From assembly GCF_006345805.1 (NCBI RefSeq), contig NW_021824711.1, positions 1 through 36,930 of the forward strand: a stretch of DNA of 36,930 nt, written 5' to 3'. This document shows, in pieces, positions 967-35,791 of this stretch. The translations under genes and the position numbers were made by a program. The DNA is from Octopus sinensis. Its lineage: Eukaryota. Each line of letters begins with the position of its first letter. Position 1 is the stretch's first letter. The notes below the pieces were generated by a model. It did not search any database and had not been told where the DNA came from. It saw only the letters and a list, made by a program, of their open reading frames with translations.

Positions 967-1091
967 TTAGCAAGAGTTGGGACATCATATCCAGCATCAA
1001 TTTTTGATTTTCCAGCAGCTACTGCACATGTCAGAATGAGTGGTGTCTGCCCTGTTTCTGTTGCTTCTTTGTCAAATGCTGCTCGTAATTC
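967..1091 (-). CDS. GH18 chitinase catalytic-domain exon (third visible exon; gene continues off the left edge)
   Basis: Encodes ELRAAFDKEATETGQTPLILTCAVAAGKSKIDAGYDVPTLA(K), typical of the GH18 beta5-alpha5 region. Acceptor aataaacAG| before 1091 and donor AA|GTAAGC after 967. Phase 0 start matches the phase 0 end of exon 4488-4725. Confidence 0.93.
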
Positions 1092-2039
1092 CTGTTTATT
1101 AAAGAAAATATTGGAAGACAAATTATTAGACATAAATTGCAAATAGCTTTCAGTCAAATGATATTTTTATTTCCCTGCAAGATCATAGGTTATGTTCTGT
1201 ATAAGCACCACTGATTTTTCATGCATTCTTCAAATTTTCTTTTTGCATCGCCCAACTGATGCCAGTATTGTCTAACAGATGTTAAAGGATAATGGTGTTT
1301 AATAGTTGGCTTTTAAAGAAACAGAGAATGCATATACAAGTATTGGTAAATGCTAGGATGTCTGTATGTAAGTGTGTATGTTGTATGAATAAAAAATATG
1401 GGATGCTTTAGATAACTAATATTGATATGTACTCCAATCAGAACATTGCTTCACCTGACATCAGAGTTCCATGGACATGCAGGAATTTGGACTCTACTAC
1501 TCCATATTAGTATATTGCTTGTTGGCACAAATTGACAGTCAATTAAATTGATCACAATACTGAGTGGTACATTGTTTTATCAGCCCAAGAAATATGAAAG
1601 GTAAAATTGACATAAGTGGAATTTGAACCCAGAACATAAAGAACCAAAAAAATACAGTGTCCAACACCCCTAATGATTCTGCCAATCCACTGGCCCGCTG
1701 ATACTGCATATAATGATATATTTAGAATAGTAAAAGAAGAAAAAGAAATCAAAGATTCTAAAGATGATTCATAATGCCATACTGCTTTACAGCTTTTAAT
1801 GCCTAGAATCTTTCATATATTTAACCCTCTTAGAACTGGGCCCCTGTGTCTAACTTTATCCTCCATCTAGGTTTCTGAGCAAAAAAATAGTTGCATACAC
1901 AGTTCCAGAGTAATAATTGCAGGCAAACTAATGGACAGAATCACAAAAGAATTCAGGAGAATAACAATAATAGTCCTATATCTCAACTACCAAATTTGTT
2001 CACCAGAATTGCTACTTTCTTCATCACTTTCAATAGTTT

Positions 2040-2178
2040 GTCTGAATCACTCCCATTGTCTGCATAAGGGTAAACTCTTTGTCTAAAGAGCTATTAGATC
2101 GAGAGGTAAAAGCGCAAAGAGAGGCTGTGTGCAGGATGGGTGAAGCAGCAGAAAGAACCTCTTGCTGATTATGTACAA

Positions 2179-2264
<86 letters not shown>

Positions 2265-2957
2265 GGGAGTTAAACTGGAAGACGAGAGCAGAAAACAACA
2301 CGTCTCTCTCCAGCCTCAACTTCCTTTTTAAGTGAAACTTGAAAAAATTGATGAGGGATTGGCAAAAGAGGAAAGTGTCTGACTTTAGCCCTTTCAGACA
2401 AGTCCACCATACTACCTCTTTTGCTACATCCACCGGACAAATAAAAACTGCCTGCCCCTCCCAGTCAAAGGAGAGCAGTGGGGCAATCTTTGCTATGGAT
2501 TCAGCTGATAGCTGGATCCATCCTACACACAACAGCAGGCATTTGACATAAACCCCACAGGTCAGCAATACTTGGGCACTGGATGAGGGCATGCAGAATA
2601 GTTTCATCACTCTGCACAGACTTCAGGCAGGCCTGTCTGATAGCACTTCTGTGCCTGTAGAGTTTATCCCAAAACAGGTAGCACCTTTCGGTAGCGCTGC
2701 TAGGCAAGGGATTTCTGGAAGTTATCCAAAGGTCCAGGCCTGAAAGTTCTCCAAAACAGACTAGTTAATTGATCCTTGTCAACCCCCAGAGTTTCTCCAA
2801 AAACATCATTGCACTTTCCCTCCACTAGCCCTCTATAGAACGCTAGAGTGGAACTACCACCGACCGCATTGCTCACCTGGTGGAGAGATGTCAGTGCTTG
2901 ATGGCACTTCAGGTGCCAATCACCCCTCCTCAGTCTACACCTAATCCAGGATTGCAA
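2040..2957 (-). mobile_element. L1/Tx1-type LINE 3' fragment, decayed, with an internal (GA)n tract
   Basis: Minus-strand frames give ETLGVDKDQLTSLFWRTF, a C-terminal zinc-knuckle-like CLKSVQSDETILHALIQCPSIADLW, and LINFFKFHLKRKLRLER. Frameshifted. Same family as 33690-34300. Confidence 0.7.
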
Positions 2958-2959
2958 TC

Positions 2960-3020
<61 letters not shown>

Positions 3021-3026
3021 GTAATA

Positions 3027-3081
<55 letters not shown>
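2958..3081. repeat. (AAT)n microsatellite
   Basis: Long near-perfect AAT run. Confidence 0.95.
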
Positions 3082-3083
<2 letters not shown>

Positions 3084-3084
3084 T

Positions 3085-3750
3085 AACAGGTATACTGGTG
3101 GGTATAATGGAAATACTGATGGGTATACTGGGATTCGTATATTTTGCCCCAGAGTCACTTTGATGGCTGGCACTGCTCTCTCACTCAATAATAATAATAA
3201 TAATAAATGCCCTGATGCAGTACCAGGCAATGGCTTTCATGGCTTCTCATCTTAACTGATTGGAAGTGTTATCATGTACATTGCTTTGTCTTGGTATAAA
3301 AGATGGGCTACAGCAAATATTCTGCTCAATACCACAGATTTGCTTGTCAGTCAGTTGCTTGACCTTCACCAGCTGAACATGTCCCTTAGTGGCTGATGAT
3401 ATGTACATCTCTAATCATGATCAAGAATAGTGGGGAAGCATCATAGCCATGTGTTGAGAGGAATTTTGGTTGGGGTTTGAATAATTCACCGCTGGAAACA
3501 TGAAAGTTTCATTCATCATCCTTAAACCTTATTCAGGGACCTCCTGAGCATGATGGGCTACTCAACCTGAAGAAAATTCTAACTGGACTCCACTTGCAAG
3601 GTCATGCACTGTTTATCTTGACATAAGATCATCATGTTATCACATGTGGTTGTAATGCATGTGCCTGGTGTACCCTCATCAGATGGGTAGTCATGATGGG
3701 TACTTTGGGCTTTGTATGTTTGTACCTCACTTTTATGGCATGCATTGCTC
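3085..3750. mobile_element. Non-coding interspersed repeat (SINE-like); partial copies at about 4075-4355 and 32880-33125
   Basis: The block gggctactcaacctgaagaaaattctaac...cttgataagagatcaccatgtc...ggtgtaccct...gatgggtagtcatgatg recurs three times in the window, usually next to AAT/GAT tracts. Confidence 0.65.
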
Positions 3751-3782
3751 TCTCACTCAATGATGATGATGATGTTGTTGTT

Positions 3783-4070
3783 GTTGTCAGAGCACTAACA
3801 ACCAAGTTCGAGAAATATGTCAAAGAAATCAGAATTGACATGAGAGCAGAACAAGCCCAAAAACATGCTCTGCTGGGGAAAAGCTAGGATTTTGAGATTG
3901 GTACTTGGATGTTGAATGCCTCCAACAATAATTAACCAAGTATCAAAGCTTCTAAAGTGCAAAACGAGACCCTGTGAGACTTCTGACAGTGGGTTGCTGT
4001 CCGCTCTCACAGAAACTAGCAGAACAAACAAGACGAAGCGTTCTGAGATGTAAAACGAAATTGGAGTTTG
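3783..4070 (+). mobile_element. R4/Dong-like RLE non-LTR retrotransposon 3' fragment
   Basis: VRALTTKFEKYVKEIRIDMRAEQAQKHALLGK resembles the extreme C-terminus of R4-clade ORFs. Starts right after a (GAT)/(GTT) tract. Confidence 0.55.
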
Positions 4071-4487
4071 GATAACTCACCTTTAGTAACATGGGTGCTT
4101 TGTTCATCATCCTTAAACAACCTTAATTCAGGGACCTTTTGAGTAGAATGGGCTACTCAACCTGAAGAAAATTCTAACTGGGGCCCACCTGATAGGTCAT
4201 GTACTGTTAATCTTGATAAGAGATCACCATGTCACGCACATATGATTGCGATGCATGCACCTGGTGTACCCTTATCAGACAGGTAGTCATGATGAGCTTC
4301 ATATATTTTACCCCACCATGACTTTGATGGTATGCACTGCTCTCTTGCTCAGTAATAAGGATTTCAAATTTTGGCATCTGCCCAGGAATTTCGAGAAGCG
4401 GGTAAGTCAATTTCATTATAAAAATCTTCATGGTCATTATTGTCATATTTTTAGTATCCAATCCTAAAGTTAAAATATTATACTTAC

Positions 4488-4725
4488 CTTTACCCACTCA
4501 GCAAAATTAGCTTTGTCATTTGACTGTGGATATTCCCAGTCAATATCCAATCCATCGAATTTATGTTTTCTGAGATAAGTGATCGCCTGTGAAATAAAAG
4601 CCTTTCTGTTTCCTGGTGCAGAAGCTATGGCAGAAAAAGGCGAAGTACCCACATTATATCCACCTACAGTTAGAATAACCTTTAAACCAGGGTTAGTTTT
4701 CTTGAAATTAATCACTTGTTGGTAC
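4488..4725 (-). CDS. GH18 chitinase exon containing the catalytic DxxDxDxE motif
   Basis: Encodes (M)YQQVINFKKTNPGLKVILTVGGYNVGTSPFSAIASAPGNRKAFISQAITYLRKHKFDGLDIDWEYPQSNDKANFAEWVK. Acceptor tttttttcttctcAG| and donor AAG|GTAAGT. 238 nt; its first base completes the AT left by exon 8260-8446 to give ATG. Confidence 0.97.
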
Positions 4726-4782
4726 CTGAGAAGAAAAAAAAAAACATTTATAAAGATTAAATAAAAACACAAAAGCACTTAT

Positions 4783-4891
4783 ATATATATACATATATAT
4801 ATATAATATTTGGGAGTATAACTCCAAACTTACTGGGAAAAATTCAATTTAGTATTAAATCGAATTTCCCAATATAAATATATAAAATATA

Positions 4892-4953
<62 letters not shown>

Positions 4954-5052
4954 TATATAGAAGGAGCTTCTACAGGACTAGAACTGTTTCATTCAAGAGA
5001 AATCTTATTTACTGTGGTTAACCCCGAATCAACCCGGGACCTACATATATAT

Positions 5053-5105
<53 letters not shown>

Positions 5106-5114
5106 TATATATAT

Positions 5115-5187
<73 letters not shown>

Positions 5188-5205
5188 CACACATATATAT
5201 ATATA
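4783..5205. repeat. Interrupted (TA)n microsatellite cluster with short unique inserts
   Basis: Several long TA runs separated by 60-90 nt inserts. Confidence 0.9.
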
Positions 5206-5370
5206 GGCGCAGGAGTGGCTGTGTGGTAAGTAGCTTGCTAACCAACCACATGGTTGCAGGTTCAGTCCCACTGCGTGGCATCTTGGGCAAGTGTCTTCTG
5301 CTATAGCCCCGGGCCGACCAATGCCTTGTGAGTGGATTTGGTAGACGGAAACTGAAAGAAGCCTGTCGTA

Positions 5371-5415
<45 letters not shown>

Positions 5416-5627
5416 TTGTGTGTCTGTGTTTGTCCCCCTAGCATTGCTTGACAACCGATGCTGGTGTGTCTGCGTCCCTGCCACTTAGCGGTTCGGCAAA
5501 AGAGACCGATAGAATAAGTACTGGGCTTACAAAGAATAAGTTCCGGGGTCGATTTGATCGACTAAAGGCGGTGCTCCAGCATGGCCGCAGTCAAATGACT
5601 GAAACAAGTAAAAGAGAAAGAGAAAGA

Positions 5628-5630
<3 letters not shown>
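5206..5630 (+). mobile_element. Full-length tRNA-derived SINE
   Basis: Head GGCGCAGGAGTGGCTGTGTGG with A-box-like TGGCTGTGTGG and B-box-like GGTTCAGTCCC, internal TA/TG tract, tail gactgaaacaagtaaaagag. Near-identical to 12760-13183. Confidence 0.9.
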
Positions 5631-5706
<76 letters not shown>

Positions 5707-6190
5707 CAGAGAGAGGCAATTGTGCAGATAAACAAGTTAAATATAACAGCTTGTGTTTGATATACAAAATATATTTAATTTGTTTATCTGCATAATTGCC
5801 TCCATATCTGCTCACCTTTAGTCCTATTAGAGCCACTCTTTACTCCACAGAATTGGTCTCTCGTAAAACATTGGAGTCTAAGTTCGAATCATTTGAGCAT
5901 TACTAAGTGTCTTTTATACTGAGAATCTCTGGATCTCATCTGTTGACTATATATATATATATGTATATAATTTGACATCAGGAAGATGTCACTGACCCAT
6001 GACACCACTCTCTTTTGAAAACACAAGGTTTGCATGTAGTGTTTGAACTTGCTCACTTTTCATGTGCATAATAATGCTCACAAACACATCTTTGTGAAAA
6101 GCATGATGCACATGCAAAATGTTAACTCTCTGGGATATGAAAGGCACCCAAATTTGCCAGCCTGTCATTTGTTTCCCGAACGCAGCAAGC

Positions 6191-6795
6191 CTGCCAAGAT
6201 TGACATGAAATCAGAGAGGGCAAGGAATCGGATGTCTCCATGCTGGTCAACATCCATGGGTCATTGCTAATGACTGGAACTTCAGCATTCAGACAATTGA
6301 GCAGCTGAGGGAACAATACAATGCCACAGACAGCATGGATGATTATCCATGCAGTGGTTGACTGAGGGTTATAACAGCATATCAATCAAGATTACCACCT
6401 GCACTGACAGCACTTGCAGGACCAATTTTGGAAAGCAACAAACGTAGGCAGACCACAGGGACTAACCATAGACCCATTTGTGTGGAGACAGTTTGCCACC
6501 AGCTAAGATCTTCCAATCTGTCTTGTCAACATCCTACTAGAAGCTCCATCCTCACAGAGTGTCATTGACGGGCACATCTGTATTGGGCTCAAAAACGTCA
6601 GAACTGGCAATATCAGCAGTGGAGGACTGCTGTCTTCTCAGATATTGCATTTCTGTGGCATATGACAGAGCTAGGGTTTGGAGAAGAAGAGGGTGAACAT
6701 CATGCCAATAGATTTGTAGTGGAGAGAGGCTCATGGGGAGGACAGAGCATCATGATATGGGGCGGGACTGCACTCAAGCAGAAACTTGGACCAGG
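6191..6795 (+). mobile_element. Decayed Tc1-like transposase fragment
   Basis: Frameshifted remnants of the paired-HTH N-terminus (PRLT..Q; IQTIEQLREQYNATDSMDDYP) and the region GEHHANRFVVERGSWGGQSIMIWGG, matching the Tc1 'ERDRFGGGSVMVWGGI' motif. Confidence 0.7.
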
Positions 6796-7189
6796 AAATG
6801 ACGTTTTATCATTAGGAAAGAACGGTTCCTTAAATAGCATTCTTCAATCAATGCTATGGCAGTCTGTTAATAAACCAGTTTCTATTTAGTATGTGAGCGA
6901 CATTTCTTCTGTGGTTTAGTATGTGTGTGTGTGTATATATATATATTGTATAGTTTACTGTTCCATTAAGGTAAGATGAACGAAAACAGTGTTCCAGTCA
7001 TTGAGAGATAAATATCATTTAATATAAATGGTATTAAAATATATAGAATTCATATTTTTTCTGTCCAAATGATTTTGAAGACTGCAGAAAAATGATAATC
7101 AGAAGGAGCAATGCCTGATCATTTGAAATATGTGTAAGTGAATAAAGTGTCCTATGACTATAATTTTTCTACTCATATACTCTGTAATT

Positions 7190-8040
7190 CATCATCATCA
7201 TTTAGCATCCGTTTTCCATGCTGGCATAGGCTGGACAGTTTGACTAAGGTCTGGAGAGCCAGCAGCTGCACCAGGCTCCAATCTGATCTGGCAATGTTTC
7301 AACAGCTGGATGACCTTCCTAACGCCAACCACTCCGAGAGTGTAGAGGGTGCTTTTTATGTGCCACCAGCAGAAAACCTAGTCAGGCAGGCCTGGTATTG
7401 ATTATGTTCAGATAATGCTTTTTACATGCCACCAGCCCAGGAGCCAGCCAGGGAGTACTGGCATTGGCCATGTTCGGTTGGTGCTTTTCTACATGCCACC
7501 AGCATGAGAGCCAGTCAGGGGGTACTGGCATTGGCCACGTTCAGATGGTGCTTTTGATGTGCCACCAGCATAGTAGCAAGTCAGGCAGACCTGGCACTGA
7601 CCGCATTCGATGGTACTTTTTATGTGCCACCAGTATGGGAGCCAGTCAGGGAGTATTGGCCACAGCTATGATATTGGTTTTGCTTGACTCAACAGGTCTT
7701 CTCAAGCATATCATATCACACAATGCATCAGGGATACTTTTAACTGGGCTGCACATGTGTAGCTACAATCTCACTTTAGTTGCCGGGTCTTCTCAATCAC
7801 AGCATACCTCCAAAGATTTTGGTCTCCTTTCATTGCCTCTGTCAGGCTCAATGTTTGAAGGTCATGCTTCACCACCTCATCCTATGTCTTACCGGGTCTG
7901 TCTCTTCAACGGGTTCCTTCCACAGTTAGGGAGTGAGACTTCCTCACACAGCTGTCCTCATCCATACGTAGCATATGACCATACCAGTGCAGTCGTCTCT
8001 CTTGCACACCACATTTGATGCTTCTTATGCCCAACTTTTC
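7190..8040 (-). mobile_element. RTE-clade LINE 3' fragment (ORF end plus 3' UTR, (ATG)n tail)
   Basis: Homologous to the 3' end of the RTE at 27418-29241 (ccataccagtgcag..tctctcttgcacaccaca; ctggatg.ccttcctaac.c.aaccactccgagagtgtag), with a catcatcat tail. Confidence 0.8.
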
Positions 8041-8259
8041 ACCAAAATTACTAATTGAAATTACTAATTGATTGTTAACTTCAAATTTATATTTTACATA
8101 TCACACATCACACTGTTGATAAGAGGATTTTTGAAATAAAGAGTAAAAAGTTCAAACTGAATACAAGCCATGGTTACTAGACAGTTCCAAGGAGACTTAC
8201 AATAGGAGGCTTACTTTCATATTGTTTAAAAAGAAAAAAAAATACACAATCATACTCAC

Positions 8260-8446
8260 ATTCCTTCTCCACCATTTATAGAAAGATCACTGGTCTCCGT
8301 TGGAGCCAATGAATTACCAGTCAATTTTGCAAAAGCATAGTGGATGTGGGAGCAGAATGATGGGTCAATATTACTTGGTTTGAAACTGCCTTGTCCAGGT
8401 CTGTATTGGGCCCAGTTGGTGAAGTAGCAAATGCGCCGATAAGCTG
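8260..8446 (-). CDS. GH18 chitinase exon encoding the mature N-terminus
   Basis: Encodes (A)AYRRICYFTNWAQYRPGQGSFKPSNIDPSFCSHIHYAFAKLTGNSLAPTETSDLSINGGEG(M). Long polypyrimidine tract with tandem acceptor CAGCAG, phase 1 start, donor AT|GTGAGT. Confidence 0.96.
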
Positions 8447-14100: not shown

Positions 14101-15540
14101 TTTGGGGCTTTTTTTTTATTAGCGCTCATTGTCAGCACAGAGTTTGGAGTGGGTATGTTTTACTGATGTTTTGTGTGTCAGTTTGATAATACTGTTCCTC
14201 TGTGTGTTTTGCTTTTTTGAGGTAGTTGGGGGTGAAGTTGTATATTTGTCTGTGTTTGTGTAGATGTGGTTTCTGAGATCTCGCTGTTTCAAAAATGGCG
14301 CTGGCTTCTTTGTGCCTCGCCACCACGGCATATCTATTATTCTGTATACATGACTCACACACAGACACAGATATTAACATTTCAATAAATCTTCTCTTAA
14401 TCATTCTACGCGGTTGTGCCTCCTTTCCCCTCTGGCACTTACATGTACTATTCAAATTATATATTTATTGCAAGGACTGTGATGTACTAAGGAGCCATTC
14501 TCATCACCTCGCTTCGCACGGTCCTTACACCACCAAGCGTTTTGGCATTTTGTCAGGTATTCTAGACTCTATTTTTTGGGTGACTTTCGAGACTATTTGG
14601 GTCTCCACTTAACCCGAATGCGTGTAGCATAGAGAACTCTACTAAAAAAAAACCTAAGGGCCAGATGGTGGTGTTAACCAAGCGAGGAATTAATACAGCC
14701 AATCAATAACTCGGGACGCAAAATACCGGAATAGAAGCCGTAATGGATATCATTAATGATTCTATCAATTCATTCCTTAAACTAATGTTTTATTTTATTG
14801 ACCCCGAAAGAATAAAAGGTACAGTTGACTTCGGCAGTTGAACTCAGAGTGAAGAGAGGTGGAACAAATACTGCAGGATATTTCGTCCAATGTACTTTAG
14901 GGATTTAAACCCCAACTGTGAAATTATCAAAAAAGTTTCACGCGAACAACCTAAAAATCGACCAGTCAACTTGAAGGTATGCCATGAACAGCATTTCGAA
15001 TGTTCTTGAGATTCGTGCTCTGTTTCCCTAGTCAAATATATGCAACCATCCTGATCTCACATTTAATTTTAGTACTACTACTCACAACATCACCCTTCTT
15101 ACGCTAACTCCACCTCGCATAAGGATGACCTCTACGACGAAGGAGGCCTACAAACAAACACGAAAACCACGTGATAGCGCTACGTCTTTGTGCCAATTCG
15201 CTACCGAAAGCAGTTTGTAGAAATAATACTCCACCGTTTAATATCAACAGGTAACATTGCCTTATTATTAGGAACTACGTTGTACAGGTGGGTAAAGGTG
15301 AAATTCATACAGTGGAAACCAGTGCCCTGTCCAGAGAGAAAAAAAACGAATCGCAAATTGCAGCCGCGAATCTGTGACACACGAGTACATAGCTTAATGC
15401 TATCTTCTTGGTCATTTCACGGTTACACTAATATGAATGGGAAAAATTCTGGATGATAGAAAGACTGGTTTCATGGGGAGGTTCTGATTTAAACACAGCA
15501 AAGAAATATGGTTTCATGGAAGTTTTATGCTAAAACTTGG

Positions 15541-15589
<49 letters not shown>

Positions 15590-15590
<1 letters not shown>

Positions 15591-16737
15591 GATGTTTAAA
15601 TACCAATACCATAGATTGTACAGTTTTATGATAGATTTAGTCTACTGCCAAGGTAGACCAACAAGCAATTTGAACTCAGAGCAGGTCTGAACAAATATCA
15701 CAAGACACAACTACACACCAAGTCCATTCTCTAACATTTTTTTTACCAGTTCACTGCCTTAACTGATATTATGTTTATCGACTCTGGAAAATTAAGGCCA
15801 TGCCTGATCTTGGTGGGGTTCAAACACAAAATGCAAGATGCTGGAATGAATGTTACAAAGCATTTTATTTGATGCCCAAACAACTCTTCTACTTCACTAG
15901 TTCCTTTGTGTCTAAAGTGCTAGCCTTATACCGAAATTGGAAACAATAAATTACAATATAAACTAAATGAATACATGATTTAAAACAATGTCATTCATAA
16001 AAGATCTGCAAGTTCCAGTCTTACCGTCTCCTGGTGTCTGTGTCTGAGCTGGAGGTTCAGGGGTTATGACATCCGGCGCACCTGAAATGAAGAGTATATC
16101 AAGTTAATTTTGTCCCCATGAAAGACACAACATGGCAAATCTAAACGAATCGTTAAATTTATAATTTTTATTTGAATAAAAGAAACTTTATAATTTATGT
16201 TATTATATTTATAATGTATGCTTTTGTGTATTGAGCATTGTTCTTGTGTGTGTGTGTGTGTGTGTGCGTGTGTGTACATGTTTCTCTTGCATGTGTAATC
16301 TTGCATCTCGTATTAGCAAATACTCTTGTATCTCCTATTAGCAAATGAAATATCTGAATAATTAATACCAAAACTCTTTTCCAATCTCTTGTTTTGATAT
16401 GTAATTATTATTCTGCAATAAAATATATTCCATGCAGACCCCACCTCAAACAAATATGAGCAACTGAATAAGCAGATGAGCTTCAAGAGAACACACTTTG
16501 GATTATAACCTTATCTGCAATATATATATATATATATATACATATGGACACACACACACACACATGTATAAACAGACAGATAGATAGATAATTAAGTCTC
16601 ATAACTGCCAATTCATGTTACAAAACAGTTTCATGCTGAAGAACCTTTCAAGTGCAGAAATGTAAATTGTCAATCATTGGGCATCATTGATGGAAAGGTA
16701 TCTTTTGACTGGTGAAAACTTATTGGAAAACTATATC
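15590..16737. repeat. Segmental repeat copy A (internally deleted)
   Basis: Colinear with both ends of copies B and C (tgatgtttaaataccaataccatagattg ... ttattggaaaactatat) but lacks the central 1.74 kb. Confidence 0.9.
16025..16081 (-). CDS. Pro/Thr linker exon, copy A (57 nt, phase 1-1, in frame, orphaned)
   Basis: tttcAG|GT GCG CCG GAT GTC ATA ACC CCT GAA CCT CCA GCT CAG ACA CAG ACA CCA GGA GAC G|GTAAGA, encoding (G)APDVITPEPPAQTQTPGD. Use in transcripts is unproven. Confidence 0.5.
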
Positions 16738-17350
16738 AAATAAGCCACCCATAATTGGATACAACTCACCCAACAAAAACTCACTACTTGAATGGACCAT
16801 AAACAAAACTTGACTTAAACAGGATTCAAATAATCCAATCAGGTGGTGCTATTAAGTTAGACATGGCCTGGACCAATCTTTGGTCGAAACATATCTAAGT
16901 TTATCTAAGTTTATGATGTTTAAATACCAATACCATAGATTGTACAGTTGTATGATAGATTTAGTCTACTGCCAAGGTAGACCGACAAGCAATTTCAACT
17001 CAGAGCAGGTCTGAACAAATATCACAAGACACAATTACACACCAAGTCCCATTCTAACATTTTTTTTACCAGTTCACTGCCTTAAACTGATATTATGTTT
17101 ATTGACACTGGAAAAATTAAGGCCATGCCTGATCTTGGTGGGGTTCAAACACAAAATGTAAGATGCTGGAATGAATACTACAAAGCATTTTATTTGATGC
17201 CCAAACAACTCTTCTACTTCACTGAGATATTAGCAAGATTTGGGATGAGAGAGAATTTCAGAAGGGCTACAGCCCTAGAGCGGAACTGACCAAAATGTTT
17301 AGAAAAGGATACAGAGGGATGAGTTGGAGGTGTTATGTAATAGGTAGATG

Positions 17351-17565
17351 GCAGAAACATTAGCACGCCGGGCAAAATGCTTAGCGGTATTTCATCTGCG
17401 TGACGTTGTGAGTTCAAATTCCGCTCAGGTCAACTTTGCCTTTCATCCTTTCGGGGTCGATAAATTAAGTACCAGTTACGCACTGAGGTCGATGTAATCG
17501 ACTAAAATACCTATGTCTGTCCTTGTTTGTCCCCTCTGTGTTTAGCCCCTTGTGGGTAATAAAGA
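17351..17565 (+). mobile_element. 5'-truncated SINE specific to copy B, with a 12-bp TSD
   Basis: Flanked by aataggtagatg at 17339-17350 and 17566-17577; absent at the equivalent site in copy C (about 20915-20925). Confidence 0.85.
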
Positions 17566-18338
17566 AATAGGTAGATGTGAGCAAAAGCAGCCATTGTAGA
17601 AGGGTAGAAAATATAACAGTGAAAGGAAAGAGGTATGAGATGGAGGTGGTATCTAACTGGGTAGATGTGAGCAATGGAGACTGTTCTAGTAGTGACACAA
17701 ATAGTAGGAGTGAGGAGACAGAGAGAGATGAAATGGAGGTGGTGTGTAAATTGAGTAGATGTGAGAAACAGTGACTATCGTAGAAGTGGTCAAACTGTAA
17801 GAGGGAAAAGATAGAGAGAAGAGATGGAGGTGGAGGAAGAAGCTAGAGGTAAAGAACAGAGACTGTTGTGATAATGGTAAAAAAGGTAATATATATCAAA
17901 TATGTGGCCATATGCCCATATTATAAATTAATATTTCAGAAGTGGAAGGTGGCAAGCTGGCAGAATTATTAGCATGTTGGGCAAAATTCTTAGTGGCATT
18001 TTATCCATCTTCATACTCTGAATTCAAATTCCGCTGAAGTCAACTTTGCTTTTCATCCTTTTGTGGGGGTCAATAAAGAAGCACCAGTTGGGTTTTGAGG
18101 GTTGATATAATCAACATACCCCCTCTTCCAAAATTGCTAGCCTTGTGCCTAAATTTGAAATCAATATTTCAGAAGTGGTGTAAGATGTTAGTTTGTGTCA
18201 CAACAGCAGCAAGATCTTATAGAACCAAAGAGTACACTATCATGAGTCTTGCTTGAACCATACTGGAATATTTAAAAGGTCCTTTCACAAAATAAATAAA
18301 TAAATAATAAAGATTGAAAAACAACAAAAAAAAGACAT

Positions 18339-18364
18339 TTTATTTCTTAACAATTTTCTTTATT
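18339..18364 (-). promoter_or_regulatory. Candidate polyadenylation signals after CBM14 exon B
   Basis: Two AATAAA hexamers on the minus strand (18359-18364 and 18339-18344), followed by a GT/T-rich stretch. Confidence 0.5.
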
Positions 18365-18429
18365 TTTCAATTAAATTCGGCTTCGGTAATTTTTTTCTTT
18401 TCACTTAGTATCTTAATAGAAAACAAACT

Positions 18430-18611
18430 TCAACATCCGGGCACTTCTGTAGAGAAGTCACAGTCTTTAATGGCTGTGCTGAAAGACGTTCCAGGAGGAC
18501 AGGGAAGTATTTGTTTACTTCCATTGGAGCATACCATATAGTTTTTGCAGTCTCCTGGGATTGCATGACCTCCTGGTGCCTTACCCACACAACTGGCACT
18601 AGACGACGCCC
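18430..18611 (-). CDS. Terminal chitin-binding (CBM14/ChtBD2) exon, copy B
   Basis: Acceptor tattctttctttcactatttAG|, phase 1. Encodes (G)ASSSASCVGKAPGGHAIPGDCKNYMVCSNGSKQILPCPPGTSFSTAIKDCDFSTEVPGC*, with six Cys in ChtBD2 spacing. Confidence 0.7.
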
Positions 18612-19317
18612 CTAAATAGTGAAAGAAAGAATACATGTGTATATGTGAGTGTGTGAGTGTACACACATATGTACATATATATATACATACGTATGTATGT
18701 ACATATATCACTAACAGAGATATGAATCGGGTGGTTTGGTCGGATCCAGTGAGCCACAGAATTGCATCGCATTCTATGTCAGCTTTAGCATGATTTTTAC
18801 AACCGGATACCCTTCATAATATCAACCACTTTACCGTGTACACCTGATGTTTGTTTTCATTCCACCAGCACTAGTGGGGTTACCCAGTAACTTGAAAAAC
18901 AGGAAAGGACAAGAAAAGATAAAAAAATGGCAGAAAAGAGGAAGGCCTTCTTGACTGAGTGGTGGTGGTATTTGAGAAGGAGGAGATGCGATTTTTATGT
19001 CAGGGAGAAGCAGGTGTCTTGTCATACACAGCTGCCCTGCATTTATATATGGGTAAGTGGGAGTATCTAGACTAAAGGTCAGATGAGAGTCATCAGATGT
19101 CAGTGCAAAAACTAAGGTCAACTTTGTTTTCCCTCCGACACCAGGTCAATAATAAAACACAGTTTAGTAATAGGGCCAATGTAATTAACTAGTTCGTTTT
19201 GTGTCTAAAGTGCTAGCCTTATACCTAAACTGGAAACAATAAATTGCAATATAAACTAAATGAATACATGAATTAAAACAATGTCGTTCATAAAAGATCT
19301 GCAAGTTCCAGTCTTAC

Positions 19318-19381
19318 CGTCTCCTGGTGTTGGTGTCTGTGTCTGAGCTGGAGGTTCAGAGGTTACGACATCCGGCACAAC
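19318..19381 (-). pseudogene. Linker exon copy B, 64 nt, frameshifted
   Basis: Splice sites are intact, but one extra base (GTTGTGCCG vs GTGCGCCG) gives GT TGT GCC GGA TGT CGT AAC CTC TGA, a premature stop. Confidence 0.7.
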
Positions 19382-19514
19382 CTGAATGAAAAGTATATCA
19401 AGTTAATTTTCTCCCCATGAAGGACACAACACACGGAAACTCTAAAGGAATCGTTAATTTATAATTTTTTTTGGACAAAAGAAACTTTATAATTTATTTT
19501 TTATATTTATATGT

Positions 19515-19792
19515 AAAAAACACCACCCGAGCGTGACCGTTCGCCAGCCTCGTCTGGCACCTGTGTCGGCGGGCACAAAAAAACACCATCTGAGCGTGAC
19601 CGTTCGCCAGCCTCGTCTGGCACCTGTGTCAGTGGTACATAAAAAGCACCCACTACACTCACGGAGTGGTTGGCGTTAGGAAGGGCATCCAGCTGTAGAA
19701 ACACTGCCAGATCTGACTGGCTTCCCAGACCCCAGTTGAACCGTCCAACCCATGCTAGCATGGAAAGCGGATGTTAAACAATGATGATGATG
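19515..19792 (+). mobile_element. RTE 3'-UTR fragment specific to copy B, with an imperfect TSD
   Basis: Ends in ccatgctagcatggaaagcggatgttaaacaatgatgatgat. Flanked by atttatatgt (19505-19514) and atttataatgt (19793-19803); absent from copies A and C. Confidence 0.8.
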
Positions 19793-20129
19793 ATTTATAA
19801 TGTATGCTTTTGTGCATTGAGCATTGTTCCTCTGTGTGTGTGTGTGTGTGTGTGTGTCTGTGTGTGTGTTTGAGGGTGTGTGTGTGTGTGTGTGTGTACA
19901 TGTTTCTCCTGCATGTATAATCTTGTAACTCCTATTAGCAAATGAAATATGTGAATAATTAATACCAAAACTCTTTTCCAATCTCTTGTTTTGATATGTA
20001 ATTATTCTGCAATAAAATATACTCCATGCATACCTCACCTCAAGCAAATATGAGTACCAGAATAAGCAGATGTGCTTCAAGAGAACACACTTTGGATTAT
20101 AACCTTATCTGCAATATATATATACATAT

Positions 20130-20168
<39 letters not shown>

Positions 20169-20181
20169 TAGACAGACAGAC

Positions 20182-20228
<47 letters not shown>

Positions 20229-20245
20229 AAGATAGATAGATAGAT

Positions 20246-20318
<73 letters not shown>

Positions 20319-21762
20319 TATAGAGAGAGAGATAATTAAGTCTCATAACAGCCAATTCATGTTACAAAACAGTTTTATGCTGAAGAACCTTTCAACTGCA
20401 GAAATGTAAATTGTCAATCATTGGGCATGATTGATTGAAATGTATTTTTTGACTGGTGAAAACCTATTGGAATACTATATATATATATGATGTTTATATA
20501 CCAATACCATAGATTGTACAGTCGTATGATAGATTTAGTCTACTGCCAAGGTAGACCAACAAGCAATTTGAACTCAGAGCAGGTCTGAACAAATATCACA
20601 AGACACAACTACACACCAAGTCCCATTCTGACATTTCTTTTACCAGTTCACTGCCTTAAACTGATATTATGTTTATCGACTCTGGAAAAATTAAGGCCAT
20701 GCCTGATCTTGGTGGGGTTCAAACACAAAGTGTAAGATGCTGGAATGAATGTTACAAAGCATTTTATTTGATGCTCAAACAACTCTTCTACTTCACTGAG
20801 ATATTAGCAGAATTTGGCATGAGAGAGAATTTCAGAAGGGCTATAGCCCTAGAGCAGAACTGACCAAAATGTTTAGAAAAGGATACAGAGGGATGAGGTG
20901 GAGGTGGTATGTAAAAAGGTAGATTTGAGCAACAGCAACCATTGTAGAAGGGTAGAAAATATAACAGTGAAAGGAAAGAGGTATGAGATGGAGGTGGTAT
21001 CTAACTGGGTAGATGTGAGCAATGGAGACTGTTCTAGTAGTGACACAAATAGTAGGAGTGAGGAGACAGAGAGAGATGAAATGGAGGTGGTGTGTAAATT
21101 GAGTAGATGTGAGAAACAGTGACTATCGTAGAAGTGGTCAAACTGTAAGAGGGAAAAGATAGAGAGAGGAGATGGAGGTGGAGGAAGAAGCTAGAGGTAA
21201 AGAACAGAGACTGTTGTAGTAGTGGTAGAAAAGGTAATATATATCAAATATGTGGCCATATGCCCATATTATAAATTAATATTTCAGAAGTGGAAGGTGG
21301 CAAGCTGGCAGAATTATTAGCATGTTGGGCAAAATTCTTAGTGGCATTTCATTCTTCTTCACACTCTGAGTTCAAATTCCGCTGAAGTCGACTTTGCTTT
21401 TCATCCTTTTGTGGGGGTCAATAAAGAAGCACCAGTTGGGTTTTGAGGGTTGATATAATCAACATACCCCCTCTTCCAAAATTGCTGACCTTGTGCCTAA
21501 ATTTGAAATCAATATTTCAGAAGTGGTGTCACAACAGCAGCAAGATCTTATAGAACCGAAGAGTACACTATCATGAGTCTTGCTTGAACCATACTGGAAT
21601 ATTTAAAATGGTCCTTTCACAAAATAAATAAATAAATAATAAAGATTGAAAAACAACAAAAAAAAAGACATTTTATTTCTTAGCAATTTTCTTTATTTTT
21701 CAATTAAATTCAGTTTCGGTAATTTTTTTCTTTTCATTTAGTATCTTAATAGCAAAGAAACT

Positions 21763-21944
21763 TCAACATCCGGGCACTTCTGTAGAGAAGTCACAGTTTT
21801 TAATGGCTGTGCTGAAAGACGTTCCAGGAGGACAGGGAAGTATTTGTTTATTTCCATTGGAGCATACCATATAGTTTTTGCAGTCTCCTGGGATTGCATA
21901 GCTTCCTGGTGCCTTACCCACACAACTGGTACTAGACGACGCCC
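21763..21944 (-). CDS. Terminal chitin-binding (CBM14/ChtBD2) exon, copy C
   Basis: Phase 1 acceptor ctatttAG|. Encodes (G)ASSSTSCVGKAPGSYAIPGDCKNYMVCSNGNKQILPCPPGTSFSTAIKNCDFSTEVPGC*. AATAAA about 70 nt downstream (21692-21697). Confidence 0.88.
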
Positions 21945-22661
21945 CTAAATAGTGAAAGAAAGAATACATGTGTATATGTGAGTGTGTGAGTGTACACACA
22001 TATGTATATATGTACATACGTATGTATGTATGTACATATATCACTAACAGAGATATGAGTTGGGTGGTTTGGTCGGATCCAGTGAGCCACAGAATTGCAT
22101 CGCATTCTATGTCAGCTTTAGCATGATTTTTACAACCGGATACCCTTCATAATATCAACCACTTTACCGTGTACACCTGATGTTTGTTTTCATTCCACCA
22201 GCACTAGTGGGGTTACCCAGTAACTTGAAAGACAGGAAAGGACAAAAAAAGATAGAAAAACAGGAGAGAAGCGAAAGGCCTTCTTGACTGAGTGGTGGTG
22301 ATGTTTGAGAAGGAGGAGATGAGATTTTTATGCCAGGGAGAAGCAGGTGTCTTGTCGTAGACAAGATACACAGCTGCCCTGCATTTATATATGGGTAAGT
22401 GGGAGTATCTAGACTAAAGGTCAGATGAGAGTCATCAGATGTCAGTGCAAAAACTAAGGTCAACTTTGTTTTCCCTCCGACACCAGGGTCAATAAAATAA
22501 AACACAGTTTAGTAATAGGGCCAATGTAATTAACTAGTTCGTTTGTGTCTAAAGTGCTAGCCTTATACCTAAACTGGAAACAATAAATTGCAATATAAAC
22601 TAAATGAATACATGAATTAAAACAATGTCGTTCATAAAAGATCTGCAAGTTCCAGTCTTAC

Positions 22662-22724
22662 CGTCTCCTGGTGTTGGTGTCTGTGTCTGAGCTGGAGGTT
22701 CAGAGGTTACGACATCCGGCGCAC
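22662..22724 (-). CDS. Pro/Thr linker exon, copy C (63 nt, phase 1-1)
   Basis: tttcAG|...|GTAAGA. Encodes (G)APDVVTSEPPAQTQTPTPGD(G) and splices in frame to the CBM14 exon at 21944. Confidence 0.8.
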
Positions 22725-23032
22725 CTGAAATGAAATGTATATCAAGTTAATTTTCTCCCCATGAAGGACACAACACGGCAACTCCATAGGAATTTCTAAA
22801 TTTCTAAATTTTTATTTGAATAAAAGAAATCTTTATAATTTATGTTTTTATATTTATAATGTATGCTTTTGTGCATTGAGCATTGTTCTTGAGTGTGTGT
22901 GTGTGTGTGTGTGTGTGTGTCTGTGTCTGTGTGTGTGTGTGTGTGCGTGTGTCTGTGTCTGTGTGTGTCTGTGTGTGTGTGTGTGTGTGTGTGTCTGTGT
23001 GTGTCTGTGTCTGTGTGTGTCTGTGTTTGTGT

Positions 23033-23084
<52 letters not shown>

Positions 23085-23186
23085 GTACATGTTTCTCCTG
23101 CATGTATTCTCTTGTTACTCCTATTAGCAAATGAAATATGTGAATAATTAATAGCAAAACTATTTTCCAATCTCTTGTTTTGATAT

Positions 23187-23465
23187 ACTTTTACTTTTAC
23201 TTTTACTTTTACTTTTACTTGTTTCAGTCATTTGACTGCGGCCATGCTGGAGCACCGCCTTTAGTCGAGCAACTCGACCCCGGGACTTATTCTTTTGTAA
23301 GCCCAGTACTTATTCTATCGGTCTCTTTTGCCGAACCGCTGCGCCCCCAGTCGCGTCGGGGTACTCGGCGTGCGGTCGAGGCGGCGGCGCGCTCGCGCGT
23401 CGTCCGTCTTGGCCGTGCCGCCGGCGTTTCTCCGGCCGACCTTAGGCGGGCGTCGGCAACGTCAA
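23187..23465 (-). mobile_element. Chimeric insertion specific to copy C: SINE 3' end fused to a 125-nt GC-rich segment
   Basis: 23188-23340 is the reverse complement of the last 150 nt or so of the SINE at 12760-13183 with a (GTAAAA)n tail. 23341-23465 is 76% GC and unrelated to that SINE. Confidence 0.85.
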
Positions 23466-23845
23466 CTGCAAAAAAATATACTCCATGCATACCTCACCTC
23501 AAGCAAATATGAGTAACAGAATAAGCAGATGAGCTGCAAGAGAACACACTTTGGATTTTAACCCTATCTGGAATATATATATACATATGCACACACACAC
23601 ACACACACACACACATGTATAGACAGACAGACAGATAGATAGATAGATAATTAAGTCTCATAACAGCCAATTCATGTTACAAAACAGTTTCATGCTGAAG
23701 AACCTTTCAAGTGCAGAAATGTAAATTGTCAATCATTGGGCATGAGTGATTGAAATGTATTTTTTGACTGGTGAAAACTTATTGGAAAACTATATATAGC
23801 ATTATTAAATCTCAGAACGAGATGTAAACAGTAATCACTCGACTA

Positions 23846-24058
23846 TGTAAAGTATAATAGCCATCTCAATATGGCTAACCACAAAGTGGGGTGTTACTGT
23901 AGCTTTTTAGCCCCAGGAGATCATCGTCTCCAGCTGGCTTTAGGCACACTATCTGTGCCCTTATGGTATTTGCAAAAGAGACAATGATCTCCTGGGGCTA
24001 AAAAGCTACACTAACACCCCACTTTGTGGTTAGCCATATTGAGATGGCTATTATACTT

Positions 24059-24062
<4 letters not shown>
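23846..24062. mobile_element. MITE/foldback element with 85-bp inverted arms and TA flanks
   Basis: 23846-23930 is the reverse complement of 23978-24062 with 2 mismatches. TA on both sides suggests the Tc1/mariner superfamily. Confidence 0.85.
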
Positions 24063-24800
<738 letters not shown>

Positions 24801-25857: not shown

Positions 25858-25874
25858 CTGTTGATGAAGATGAC
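25858..25874 (-). CDS. Candidate 17-nt micro-exon encoding SSSST(G)
   Basis: cgtatttcttttcttcatttatgcAG|G TCA TCT TCA TCA ACA G|GTGAGA. Its phase 1 end matches the linker exon's phase 1 start. Confidence 0.55.
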
Positions 25875-29241: not shown

Positions 29242-29369
29242 ATATATATATATGCACACACACACACAATACACACACTCTCACACACACACACGCATGC
29301 ATACACACACATACACACACATACGCGCACACATGCACACACACACACACACACACACATGATGAGCCT

Positions 29370-29522
29370 CCTCAGCTCCCAACCACCAAATCCATTCACG
29401 AGGCTTTGTCGGCCTGGTGCTATAACAAAAGACATTTGCACCCAAGGTGCCACACAGCGGGACTGAACATGGAACCATGCCATTAGGAACCAAACTTCTT
29501 ACCACACAATCACACCTATGCC
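29370..29522 (-). mobile_element. tRNA-SINE 5' portion
   Basis: Reverse complement of the SINE head (ccaaggtgccacacagcgggactgaacatggaaccatg). Confidence 0.7.

Positions 29523-35204: not shown

Positions 35205-35790
<586 letters not shown>

Positions 35791-35791
<1 letters not shown>

What the first reader, a model, noticed from the sequence alone, without database searches (positions are those of the whole stretch)
15590..23797. Triplicated linker+CBM14 cassette: a candidate switchable C-terminus system for a chitinase
Seen: three tandem copies of a roughly 3.3-kb unit containing the last two exons of an upstream gene. In transcription order they run linker C (63 nt), CBM14-C plus polyA, linker B (frameshifted), CBM14-B plus polyA, linker A (57 nt, no CBM14). 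All acceptors are phase 1 and all splice sites are intact, so one upstream catalytic domain could in principle end in CBM14-C or CBM14-B, lengthen its linker, or run on to the next gene. Established: GH18-linker-CBM14 is the usual animal chitinase architecture, and chitinases are reported from cephalopod posterior salivary glands. Inference: exon-level duplication creating alternative last exons rather than whole-gene paralogues. Three diverged copies with private insertions are hard to explain as two mis-joined haplotypes.
Basis: partly seen in the sequence, partly recalled or inferred. Interest (0 to 1): 0.8.

Follow-up and report, generated by a model that had tools for sequence, protein, structure and literature searches.

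The report
Octopus chitinase tail-exon cassette array
The repeated stretch is real: it is the first part of a young tandem array of spare "linker + chitin-binding domain" end-exons of one octopus salivary-gland chitinase gene. Public gene models already use these exons as alternative protein tails. The "next gene" in this window is an assembly artefact.

Summary
On the minus strand there are two full cassettes of about 3.3 kb and one short cassette of 1.3 kb. Each carries a Pro/Thr-rich linker exon (63, 64 and 57 nt). The two full cassettes also carry a terminal CBM14 exon with its own stop codon and AATAAA signals.

The window is a whole unplaced 36.9-kb contig of Octopus sinensis that re-represents one chromosomal chitinase gene. 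That gene has five linker exons and four CBM14 end-exons. RefSeq models X1-X7 end in each of the four CBM14s, with 1, 2, 4 or 5 linkers. Model X6 is exactly linker C + CBM14-C.

O. vulgaris has the same array, including the short cassette A. O. bimaculoides has a single cassette, so the array is specific to this lineage.

The "next gene" is intron 1 to exon 4 of the same gene. It is joined at a (TA)n tract, and about 500 nt beside the join look like raw-read errors, so the join is probably chimeric. The linker B frameshift is private to this contig.

The alternative-tail reading is partly supported. It rests on computed models plus one cDNA-derived protein of the CBM14-C type. Selection signals are weak, and CBM14 #3 of O. 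vulgaris carries a stop codon. Interest is moderate.

The parts
25858..25874 (-). 17-nt micro-exon GTCATCTTCATCAACAG (phase 2 in, phase 1 out). It encodes (G)SSSST(G) and joins the last GH18 exon to the first linker exon.
   Evidence: Regex and coordinates. The peptide SSSST is present in isoforms X1-X7. Flanks are TTATGCAG| and |GTGAGA.
20472..23798 (-). Cassette C (unit 1 of the array), about 3.3 kb. It is 100% identical over 3327 aligned positions to chromosomal cassette 1.
22662..22724 (-). Linker exon C, 63 nt, phase 1/1, encoding (G)APDVVTSEPPAQTQTPTPGD(G).
   Evidence: Identical to chromosomal L1 and to the linker of RefSeq X6.
21763..21944 (-). CBM14-C terminal exon, 182 nt including TGA. 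It has six Cys. AATAAA lies at 21697 and 21677.
   Evidence: Pfam PF01607, E = 4.2e-14.. Identical to the C-terminus of X6 and of the cDNA-derived BAX02570.1.
16905..20483 (-). Cassette B (unit 2), about 3.6 kb. It is about 93-95% identical to cassette C and orthologous to O. vulgaris cassette 2. It carries a private transposon-like insert at 19515-19793.
19318..19381 (-). Linker exon B, 64 nt. Compared with the chromosomal and O. vulgaris L2, one T is missing from the polypyrimidine tract and one T is added in the exon. Read from a phase-1 junction it gives GCAGCRNL*.
18430..18611 (-). CBM14-B terminal exon, 182 nt including stop. It is intact, with six Cys, and differs from CBM14-C by 5 amino acids. 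AATAAA lies at 18364 and 18344.
   Evidence: Pfam PF01607, E = 5.8e-13..
15575..16905 (-). Short cassette A, about 1.3 kb: linker exon and flanks, no CBM14. It is orthologous to the O. vulgaris L3 cassette and absent from the O. sinensis chromosome assembly.
16025..16081 (-). Linker exon A, 57 nt, phase 1/1, encoding (G)APDVITPEPPAQTQTPGD(G). It has a 6-nt in-frame deletion.
   Evidence: O. vulgaris L3 shares the DVITPEPP motif.
15543..15590 (.). (TA)n tract where the contig jumps from the array (chromosome position L001 about 69.9 kb) to intron 1 (L001 22.5 kb). Probably a chimeric join.
967..8446 (-). Exons 2-4 of the same chitinase gene (8446-8260, 4725-4488, 1091-967), covering GH18 profile positions 1-171 and the DGLDIDWE catalytic motif.
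   Evidence: Pfam PF00704. tblastn. Coordinates. Block is 99.5% identical to L001 22509-38037.

Best explanation
The region is the proximal part of a lineage-specific tandem array of 3'-end cassettes belonging to a single GH18 chitinase gene of Octopus sinensis. The gene is annotated as 'acidic mammalian chitinase' and is the homologue of the chitinase found in the posterior salivary gland.

Each full cassette has two exons:
- a 63-nt, phase-1/phase-1 exon for a Pro/Thr-rich linker;
- a terminal exon for a six-cysteine CBM14 chitin-binding domain, with its own stop codon and two AATAAA signals.

The array arose by repeated tandem duplication. This happened after the split from the O. bimaculoides lineage and before the O. 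sinensis / O. vulgaris split. It has since been reshuffled by gene conversion or unequal exchange.

Because every linker exon is symmetric in phase, a linker donor has two in-frame choices. It can splice to the next CBM14 acceptor, ending the message there, or skip on to a later linker or CBM14. This yields proteins with 1-5 linkers and any of four CBM14 tails.

What is shown: the anatomy, its conservation in O. vulgaris, and the existence of RefSeq models that use all four tails.

What is inferred: the proximal path (micro-exon -> linker C -> CBM14-C, then polyadenylation) is the main product. Distal tails are minor alternatives whose use depends on competition between splicing and cleavage at the proximal poly(A) site. 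Whether that choice is regulated or matters functionally is open.

The window itself is an unplaced contig with a probably chimeric join, so the catalytic exons that follow the cassettes are the same gene's 5' part.
For: - The array is real and the exons are intact.
- The window is the whole 36,930-bp contig that carries XP_029653829.2.
- The chromosomal locus L001 has linkers at 64285, 67639, 70816, 76011 and 77380, and CBM14 exons at 65065, 68417, 73797 and 80345.
- RefSeq isoforms of 557, 536, 494, 494, 473, 473 and 473 aa differ in steps of 21 aa and end in four different CBM14s.
- X6 and the cDNA-derived BAX02570.1 end in the CBM14-C sequence.
- O. vulgaris L002 has L1-C1-L2-C2-L3(short)-L4-C3. 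It is collinear with window 20134->15541 in one HSP of 4.6 kb at 95.4%.
- O. bimaculoides L003 has one linker and one CBM14, with the neighbouring gene 2.2 kb beyond.
- In the tree the O. bimaculoides copy lies outside two well-supported clades (99/96 and 100/98). Window B pairs with O. vulgaris C2.
- Chromosomal cassette 2 is a B/C mosaic.
- The protein group containing BAX02570.1 was identified in the adult O. vulgaris posterior salivary gland proteome (PMC7693380 supplement).
Against: - No transcript or read data could be examined here. The XP_ isoforms are computed models. Junctions among the near-identical cassettes 1 and 2 could come from multi-mapped reads.
- Protein searches found no independent assembled transcript products with these tails.
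- Constraint on the CBM14 copies is weak: pN/pS about 0.5-0.8 between the two types and above 1 within types, on very few sites.
- O. vulgaris C3 has an in-frame stop before the last Cys.
- Linker B is out of frame in this contig.
- The O. bimaculoides assembly has N gaps near the locus, so collapse of copies there cannot be excluded.
Confidence: 0.8

Rival explanations
1. Dead duplicates. The array is real, but only the first cassette (linker C + CBM14-C) is ever spliced in and polyadenylated. Cassettes B, A and the distal ones are young, neutrally drifting pseudo-exons. The RefSeq isoforms that use them come from mis-mapped reads or rare splicing noise.
For: - The only cDNA-derived protein (BAX02570.1) has the C1-type tail.
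- A complete terminal exon with two AATAAA signals lies first in line.
- B versus C: 6 exon differences, 5 of them non-synonymous, at a rate like the flanks (3.3% versus about 3%).
- O. vulgaris C3 has an in-frame stop.
- Linker B is frameshifted in this contig.
- No independent transcript-derived proteins were found.
Against: - All four O. sinensis CBM14 exons keep exactly 182 nt, six Cys, the acceptor, the stop and the poly(A) hexamers. This holds despite about 11% divergence between types and unalignable flanks.
- Models X1, X2, X3, X5 and X7 contain C3- or C4-specific residues that cannot arise from mis-mapping of C1 reads.
- At least three CBM14 copies have persisted since before the O. 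sinensis / O. vulgaris split.
Confidence: 0.35
2. Real internal tandem duplication. On one haplotype, or collapsed in the chromosome assembly, the segment from intron 1 to cassette A (about 47 kb) is duplicated in tandem. Linker A would then truly be followed by exon 2. Both junctions are phase 1, so a chitinase with two catalytic domains could be spliced.
For: - The contig has no N gap at the join.
- There is short microhomology at the breakpoint, TAT(C) / AAGTTTT.
- The linker A donor and the exon 2 acceptor are both phase 1.
- An Argonauta hians model has two GH18 stretches in one protein.
Against: - The join lies inside a (TA)n tract.
- The roughly 500 nt next to it carry 84 alignment columns private to the contig, some of them end-gap columns, where the O. 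sinensis chromosome and O. vulgaris agree. Only 1 column is private to the chromosome. This is typical of a thinly covered, error-rich stretch.
- Neither chromosome assembly shows the junction.
- The rest of the contig differs from the chromosome by only about 0.1% substitutions.
Confidence: 0.1
3. Assembly artefact. The three copies come from mis-joined haplotypes or over-expansion of a single cassette by the assembler.
For: The window is an unplaced contig. It has one doubtful join and many 1-bp indels relative to the chromosome.
Against: - Copies C and B differ by 5-7%, with private transposon inserts, while the contig differs from the chromosome by about 0.1% elsewhere.
- The same multi-cassette order is present in the O. 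sinensis chromosome and in an independent O. vulgaris assembly. Window B and A are orthologous to O. vulgaris cassettes 2 and 3.
Confidence: 0.03

Closest known systems
Animal GH18 chitinases with a C-terminal CBM14 (human chitotriosidase CHIT1, acidic mammalian chitinase)
   Same: The architecture is the same: signal peptide, GH18 with the DxxDxDxE motif, a Ser/Thr/Pro-rich linker, and a six-Cys CBM14. The octopus CBM14 aligns to the CHIT1 chitin-binding domain (PDB 6SO0, 5HBF). The F (type I) or Y (type II) of CDF/CDY falls on CHIT1 W465. From my own knowledge, CHIT1 also has a form lacking the CBM, and W465 is needed for chitin binding. The octopus micro-exon-skipped models ending GCAGCRNL* would be a comparable form.
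   Different: The vertebrate genes are described with one linker and one CBM14 exon set. Here the linker exon is present 5-6 times and the CBM14 terminal exon 4 times within one gene, and models use each.
Octopus posterior salivary gland chitinase (BAX02570.1 / A0A1S7J204; enzyme purified by Ogino et al. 2014, cited in PMC4728518)
   Same: It is the same gene family member. It is identical to the window's exons 2-4 and to CBM14-C. Its protein group was detected in the adult O. vulgaris posterior salivary gland (PMC7693380 supplement).
   Different: This is a single protein sequence with one 23-residue linker and the C1-type tail. No paper found in these searches describes the cassette array or alternative tails.
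Alternative last exons created by tandem exon duplication, and mutually exclusive duplicated exons (for example insect chitin synthase 1 exons 8a/8b, Dscam); recalled from memory
   Same: Tandemly duplicated exons of equal length and phase offer interchangeable protein segments from one gene.
   Different: Here the alternatives are terminal exons, each with its own poly(A) signal. The choice would therefore be a splice-versus-cleavage competition, not mutually exclusive internal splicing. No docking/selector RNA pairing was looked for.
[quoted passage not shown]
   Same: Variation in the length of the Pro/Thr-rich linker between the catalytic and binding domains of GH18 chitinases.
   Different: In the fish these are separate isozymes. 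In the octopus the length variation comes from including 1-5 copies of a 21-codon exon, plus 6-nt slippage within the exon (57, 63 and 69 nt).
Squid beak chitin-binding protein 3 (PDB 7BWE) and the 25-kDa polyphenol-binding protein (PDB 8IN3)
   Same: These are the closest solved CBM14 domains by sequence (E = 6.7e-8 and 8.2e-12).
   Different: They are structural or other binding proteins, not attached to a GH18 catalytic domain.

Membership tests
CBM14 / peritrophin-A chitin-binding domain (Pfam PF01607) | Profile match above the curated cut-off over the whole domain | tested here: met
   CBM14-C scores 52.8 bits and CBM14-B 49.2 bits against a cut-off of 22.1, over profile positions 1-53 of 53.
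CBM14 / peritrophin-A chitin-binding domain (Pfam PF01607) | Six conserved cysteines and conserved aromatic positions | tested here: met
   All six Cys are present in the 2 window copies, the 4 chromosomal copies, O. vulgaris C1 and C2, and the O. bimaculoides copy. O. vulgaris C3 has a stop before Cys6. The aromatic residue aligned to CHIT1 W465 is F or Y.
CBM14 / peritrophin-A chitin-binding domain (Pfam PF01607) | Binds chitin | not testable with these tools
   Needs a binding assay of each recombinant tail.
GH18 chitinase (Pfam PF00704) | GH18 profile match and the catalytic DxxDxDxE motif | tested here: met
   Exons 2-4 in the window cover profile positions 1-171. Exon 3 scores 75.7 bits and contains DGLDIDWE. 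The full-length chromosomal products carry PF00704 + PF01607.
Alternative last exon (alternative C-terminus) gene | Two or more terminal exons, each with its own acceptor, in-frame stop and poly(A) signal, reachable in frame from a shared upstream donor | tested here: met
   All junctions are phase 1, and AATAAA x2 follows every CBM14 exon.
Alternative last exon (alternative C-terminus) gene | Transcripts or proteins that actually end in each alternative exon | tested here: inconclusive
   RefSeq computed isoforms X1-X7 use all four tails, and a cDNA-derived protein uses C1. No reads or independent transcript-derived proteins could be examined. The salivary gland proteome identifies the protein group but not the tail.
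Alternative last exon (alternative C-terminus) gene | Purifying or diversifying selection on each alternative exon | tested here: inconclusive
   pN/pS is 0.5-0.8 between types. C3 versus C4 shows 6 non-synonymous and 0 synonymous differences, with the exon 2.7-fold more diverged than its flanks (Fisher p = 0.036). The numbers are too small to decide.
Tandem segmental (exon-cassette) duplication | Head-to-tail copies including non-coding flanks, present in independent assemblies, single-copy in an outgroup | tested here: met
   Caveat: there are N gaps in the O. bimaculoides assembly.
Mutually exclusive exon cluster (Dscam type) | Internal alternative exons chosen one at a time through competing RNA pairings | not tested
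   The alternatives here are terminal exons and optional, additive linker exons (X1 includes five), so the one-at-a-time rule does not hold for the linkers. RNA pairing was not examined.

The most novel reading that the evidence does not exclude
A salivary (venom-gland) chitinase of the common-octopus lineage has evolved a combinatorial C-terminus. Tissue, life stage or prey would set how many 21-residue linker modules are included and which of four chitin-binding domains ends the protein. The binding hairpin (NKQIL / SKQIL / IIHIL / IKFIF) and the F/Y at the CHIT1-W465 position would be under diversifying selection for different chitin substrates.
Probability: 0.2. Interest if true: 0.65.

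Novelty: new variant of a known kind. Interest (0 to 1): 0.42.

Why it matters
If the distal tails are really used, one gene would make a family of chitinases that differ in reach (linker length) and in substrate grip (binding domain). That would be a compact way to diversify a secreted feeding or venom enzyme. It would also be a clean natural experiment on how tandem exon duplication creates alternative protein ends within a few million years.

The result also serves as a caution for genome scans. The 'two genes in a row' picture comes from an unplaced, permuted contig. The two public versions of the locus disagree in cassette number and content, so copy number and the linker B frameshift need read-level confirmation.

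Tried and rejected
1. Exhaustive HMMER search with the 59-aa CBM14-C. The ranking was dominated by unrelated proteins with many CBM14 repeats, so it did not identify the gene.

2. Word-indexed search with the spliced 80-aa linker + CBM14. There were no candidates of 44-140 aa, hence no short transcript-derived fragments.

3. A 322-aa composite query (exons 2-4 + CBM14-B + linker C + CBM14-C). I used it only to pass the length filter. It found the O. sinensis gene cluster. The composite is not a claimed protein.

4. Look-ups of isoform X3 and of O. bimaculoides X2 by exact sequence failed, because only the longest product of a gene is indexed. X1 and the longer models worked.

5. I looked for GH18 exons upstream of the cassettes (window 23.8-36.9 kb) by motif and by tblastn. 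There are none, only a reverse-transcriptase fragment and a Pif1-helicase fragment. This rejects the idea that the catalytic domain of an 'upstream gene' lies in the window.

6. I tried to reach the distal O. vulgaris array through the neighbouring gene's orthologue. It was not in the collection, so whether O. vulgaris has an intact C4 is unknown.

7. I searched the supplements of the salivary gland proteome paper for tail-specific peptides. No sequences matched. Some of the stored files are truncated, so this is not evidence of absence.

8. I considered a structure prediction of the CBM14 variants and dropped it. The tool returns no coordinates, so variable residues could not be mapped onto a binding face.

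9. The first attempt at a full gapped alignment of contig versus chromosome timed out. I repeated it with megablast.

Full report
1. THE OBSERVATION

Self-comparison of the window shows a tandem repeat between about 15575 and 23798. There are two full units of about 3.3-3.6 kb: unit C at 23798-20472 and unit B at 20483-16905. The longest shared block, 1973 nt, is 94.8% identical. A short unit A at 16905-15575 lacks about 2 kb.

- Linker C 22724-22662, 63 nt.
- CBM14-C 21944-21763, with AATAAA at 21697 and 21677.
- Linker B 19381-19318, 64 nt.
- CBM14-B 18611-18430, with AATAAA at 18364 and 18344.
- Linker A 16081-16025, 57 nt.

The linker acceptors, the three ACG|GTAAGA donors and the CBM14 acceptors TTTAG|G are intact, and all are phase 1. 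Both CBM14 exons match Pfam PF01607 end to end. Private insertions in units B and C are real.

2. WHAT THE WINDOW IS

A composite query found an Octopus sinensis protein cluster. Its members include XP_029653829.2, a 189-aa partial chitinase whose longest contig is 36,930 bp. The window is therefore that whole unplaced contig.

The same cluster holds seven RefSeq isoforms of one chromosomal gene. I fetched that gene as L001 (CM016873.1:51,144,541-51,235,066, gene about 70 kb).

Contig and chromosome match in two blocks:
- Window 36930->17565 = L001 50123-69448 (98.8%).
- Window 15543->1 = L001 22509-38037 (99.5%).

In the chromosome the second block comes first: it runs from intron 1 to exon 4. 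The contig is therefore permuted. The GH18 exons that follow the cassettes in the window (8446-8260, 4725-4488, 1091-967) are exons 2-4 of the same gene. Exons 1 and 5-8 (L001 17.0 kb and 38.7-46.4 kb) are not in the contig.

The switch between blocks lies in a (TA)n tract at 15543-15590. In the roughly 500 nt that follow, the contig has 84 private alignment columns, some of them end-gap columns. Most are small insertions and scrambles. At these positions the O. sinensis chromosome and O. vulgaris agree with each other, and only one column is private to the chromosome.

Elsewhere the contig differs from the chromosome by only about 0.1% substitutions, but by 52 one-base indels. I read the join as a chimeric assembly event. 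A real internal tandem duplication cannot be excluded (confidence about 0.1).

3. THE FULL ARRAY

L001 carries five in-frame 63-nt linker exons (64285, 67639, 70816, 76011, 77380). It also carries four 182-nt CBM14 terminal exons (65065, 68417, 73797, 80345). Each CBM14 exon has six Cys and a TGA stop. Each is followed by two AATAAA hexamers, at 66 and 86 nt after the stop in type I and at about 300 and 320 nt in type II, which has a 232-nt insertion.

A single 17-nt micro-exon (window 25874-25858) connects exon 8 (phase 2) to the first linker (phase 1). It encodes SSSST.

The RefSeq isoforms map onto these exons as follows:
- X6 = L1-C1
- X4 = L1-L2-C2
- X3 = L1-L2-C3
- X7 = L1-C3
- X5 = L3 or L5-C4
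- X2 = L1-L3-L4-L5-C4
- X1 = L1-L2-L3-L4-L5-C4

X6 is letter for letter the window's micro-exon + linker C + CBM14-C. The cDNA-derived chitinase BAX02570.1 has the same CBM14.

4. EVOLUTION

The O. vulgaris locus L002 reads as follows:
- L1 (69 nt), C1, L2, C2.
- L3, a short cassette whose peptide has the DVITPEPP motif, like window linker A.
- L4.
- C3, which has an in-frame stop before the last Cys and a local 203-nt duplication.

The locus I fetched ends there. Window 20134->15541 aligns to L002 67840-72423 in one 4.6-kb HSP at 95.4%. Cassettes B and A are therefore real and orthologous. It is the O. sinensis chromosome assembly that lacks cassette A.

Window cassette C equals chromosomal cassette 1 (100% of 3327 positions). 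Chromosomal cassette 2 is a mosaic: B-like in its first third and C-like from the linker exon onward. This could be gene conversion, haplotype difference or mis-assembly.

O. bimaculoides has one linker and one CBM14, with the neighbouring gene 2.2 kb beyond. That assembly has N gaps near the locus.

In a tree of the CBM14 exons with 60-nt flanks, the O. bimaculoides copy lies outside two clades. Type I contains C1, C2 and window B and C (support 99/96). Type II contains C3 and C4 (support 100/98). Window B pairs with O. vulgaris C2, and C3 pairs with O. vulgaris C3. The array therefore formed after the O. bimaculoides split and before the O. sinensis / O. vulgaris split.

5. IS IT USED?

For:
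- Four open, full-length, splice-competent terminal exons have been kept despite about 11% divergence and unalignable flanks between types.
- Models contain C3- and C4-specific residues.
- The symmetric phase makes every combination in-frame.

Against, or neutral:
- pN/pS is 0.5-0.8 between types.
- B versus C has 5 non-synonymous and 1 synonymous change, at the same rate as the introns.
- C3 versus C4 has six non-synonymous and no synonymous changes and is 2.7-fold more diverged than 3.6 kb of flanks, but p is only 0.036.
- O. vulgaris C3 is truncated.
- Linker B is out of frame in this contig through two compensating T indels that neither the chromosome nor O. vulgaris shares.
- No independent transcript-derived proteins were retrievable.

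The gene product itself is a genuine secreted enzyme. Its protein group was identified in the adult O. vulgaris posterior salivary gland, and two Trinity isoforms (i1, i3) were listed in that group (PMC7693380 supplement). A chitinase was purified from that gland (Ogino et al. 2014, cited in PMC4728518).

6. MECHANISM (INFERRED)

The default path is exon 8 -> micro-exon -> L1 -> C1, with cleavage at the C1 poly(A) site. If the L1 donor pairs instead with the L2 acceptor (a 3.3-kb intron rather than 0.7 kb), or with a later CBM14 acceptor, the message gains linker modules and ends in another CBM14.

Skipping the micro-exon puts L1 in phase 2 and gives GCAGCRNL*. That is a chitinase without a binding domain, as modelled for O. 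bimaculoides X2 and O. vulgaris.

The differences among tails cluster in two places. One is the stretch after the third Cys (NKQIL / SKQIL / IIHIL / IKFIF). The other is around the fifth Cys, where the F or Y aligns with CHIT1 W465. From my own knowledge, that tryptophan is needed for chitin binding.

7. COMPARISON AND NOVELTY

The protein is an ordinary GH18-linker-CBM14 chitinase. Tandem exon duplication giving alternative ends is a known kind of event. Four literature searches found no description of multiple alternative CBM14 end-exons in a chitinase. The isoforms do already exist as database models.

I rate it a new variant of a known kind and of moderate interest. The 'run on to the next gene' option and the frameshift should be treated as properties of a flawed contig.

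Noticed in passing
window 25858-25874 (minus strand): A 17-nt micro-exon (phase 2 to phase 1) encoding SSSST. Skipping it makes the first linker read GCAGCRNL*, giving a chitinase without a binding domain. This is exactly the C-terminus of O. bimaculoides isoform X2 and of two O. vulgaris models.
   Followed up: partly
window 15050-15590: The contig jumps from the cassette array to intron 1 of the same gene inside a (TA)n tract. The next roughly 500 nt carry 84 contig-private alignment columns (some end-gap) where the chromosome and O. vulgaris agree. The join is probably chimeric.
   Followed up: yes
L001 66525-69890 (O. sinensis chromosome, cassette 2): Chromosomal cassette 2 is a mosaic: like window cassette B in its first third and like cassette C from the linker exon onward. 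The chromosome also lacks the short cassette A, which the contig and O. vulgaris share. This could be gene conversion, haplotype difference or mis-assembly.
   Followed up: partly
L002 76258-76644 (O. vulgaris): The third CBM14 exon of O. vulgaris has an in-frame stop five codons before the end (…CDYS*KVSGC). It is preceded by a 203-nt local duplication of its acceptor and first 19 codons.
   Followed up: no
window 28275-29498 (minus); also 27954-28241 and 7909-8100: A reverse-transcriptase ORF fragment (Pfam RVT_1, E = 1.6e-16) of a retroelement lies in the long intron before the cassettes. Related fragments occur elsewhere in the window.
   Followed up: no
window 31888-32307 (minus): An ORF fragment with a Pif1 helicase 2B domain (E = 2.6e-18), probably a Helitron-type transposon remnant.
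   Followed up: no
window 24049-24798: A local tandem duplication with a 358-nt period (97-100% identical), rich in (TA)n and (GA)n, lies just upstream of the array.
   Followed up: no
window 17346-17477, 17955-18089, 21303-21437, 34985-35199: Copies of a short interspersed repeat (75-80% identical to each other) sit inside the cassettes and elsewhere. Their shared core, GAGTTCAAATTCCGC…, suggests a tRNA-derived SINE to me. This was not checked.
   Followed up: no
window 35116-35900: About 0.8 kb of triplet-repeat-like, low-complexity sequence. It translates as long runs of T, A, L, C or Y in different frames.
   Followed up: no
linker exons: window 16025-16081; L002 65247-65318; BAX02570.1: Linker exons vary in length by in-frame 6-nt steps (57, 63 and 69 nt) within the CAGACA/CCAACA micro-repeat. 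Linker length therefore varies both by exon number and by slippage within the exon.
   Followed up: partly
L001 83776-90526 (minus); L003 29650-37436 (minus): A second GH18 chitinase gene without a CBM14 (389-390 aa) lies tail-to-tail 2-3 kb beyond the array, in both O. sinensis and O. bimaculoides.
   Followed up: no
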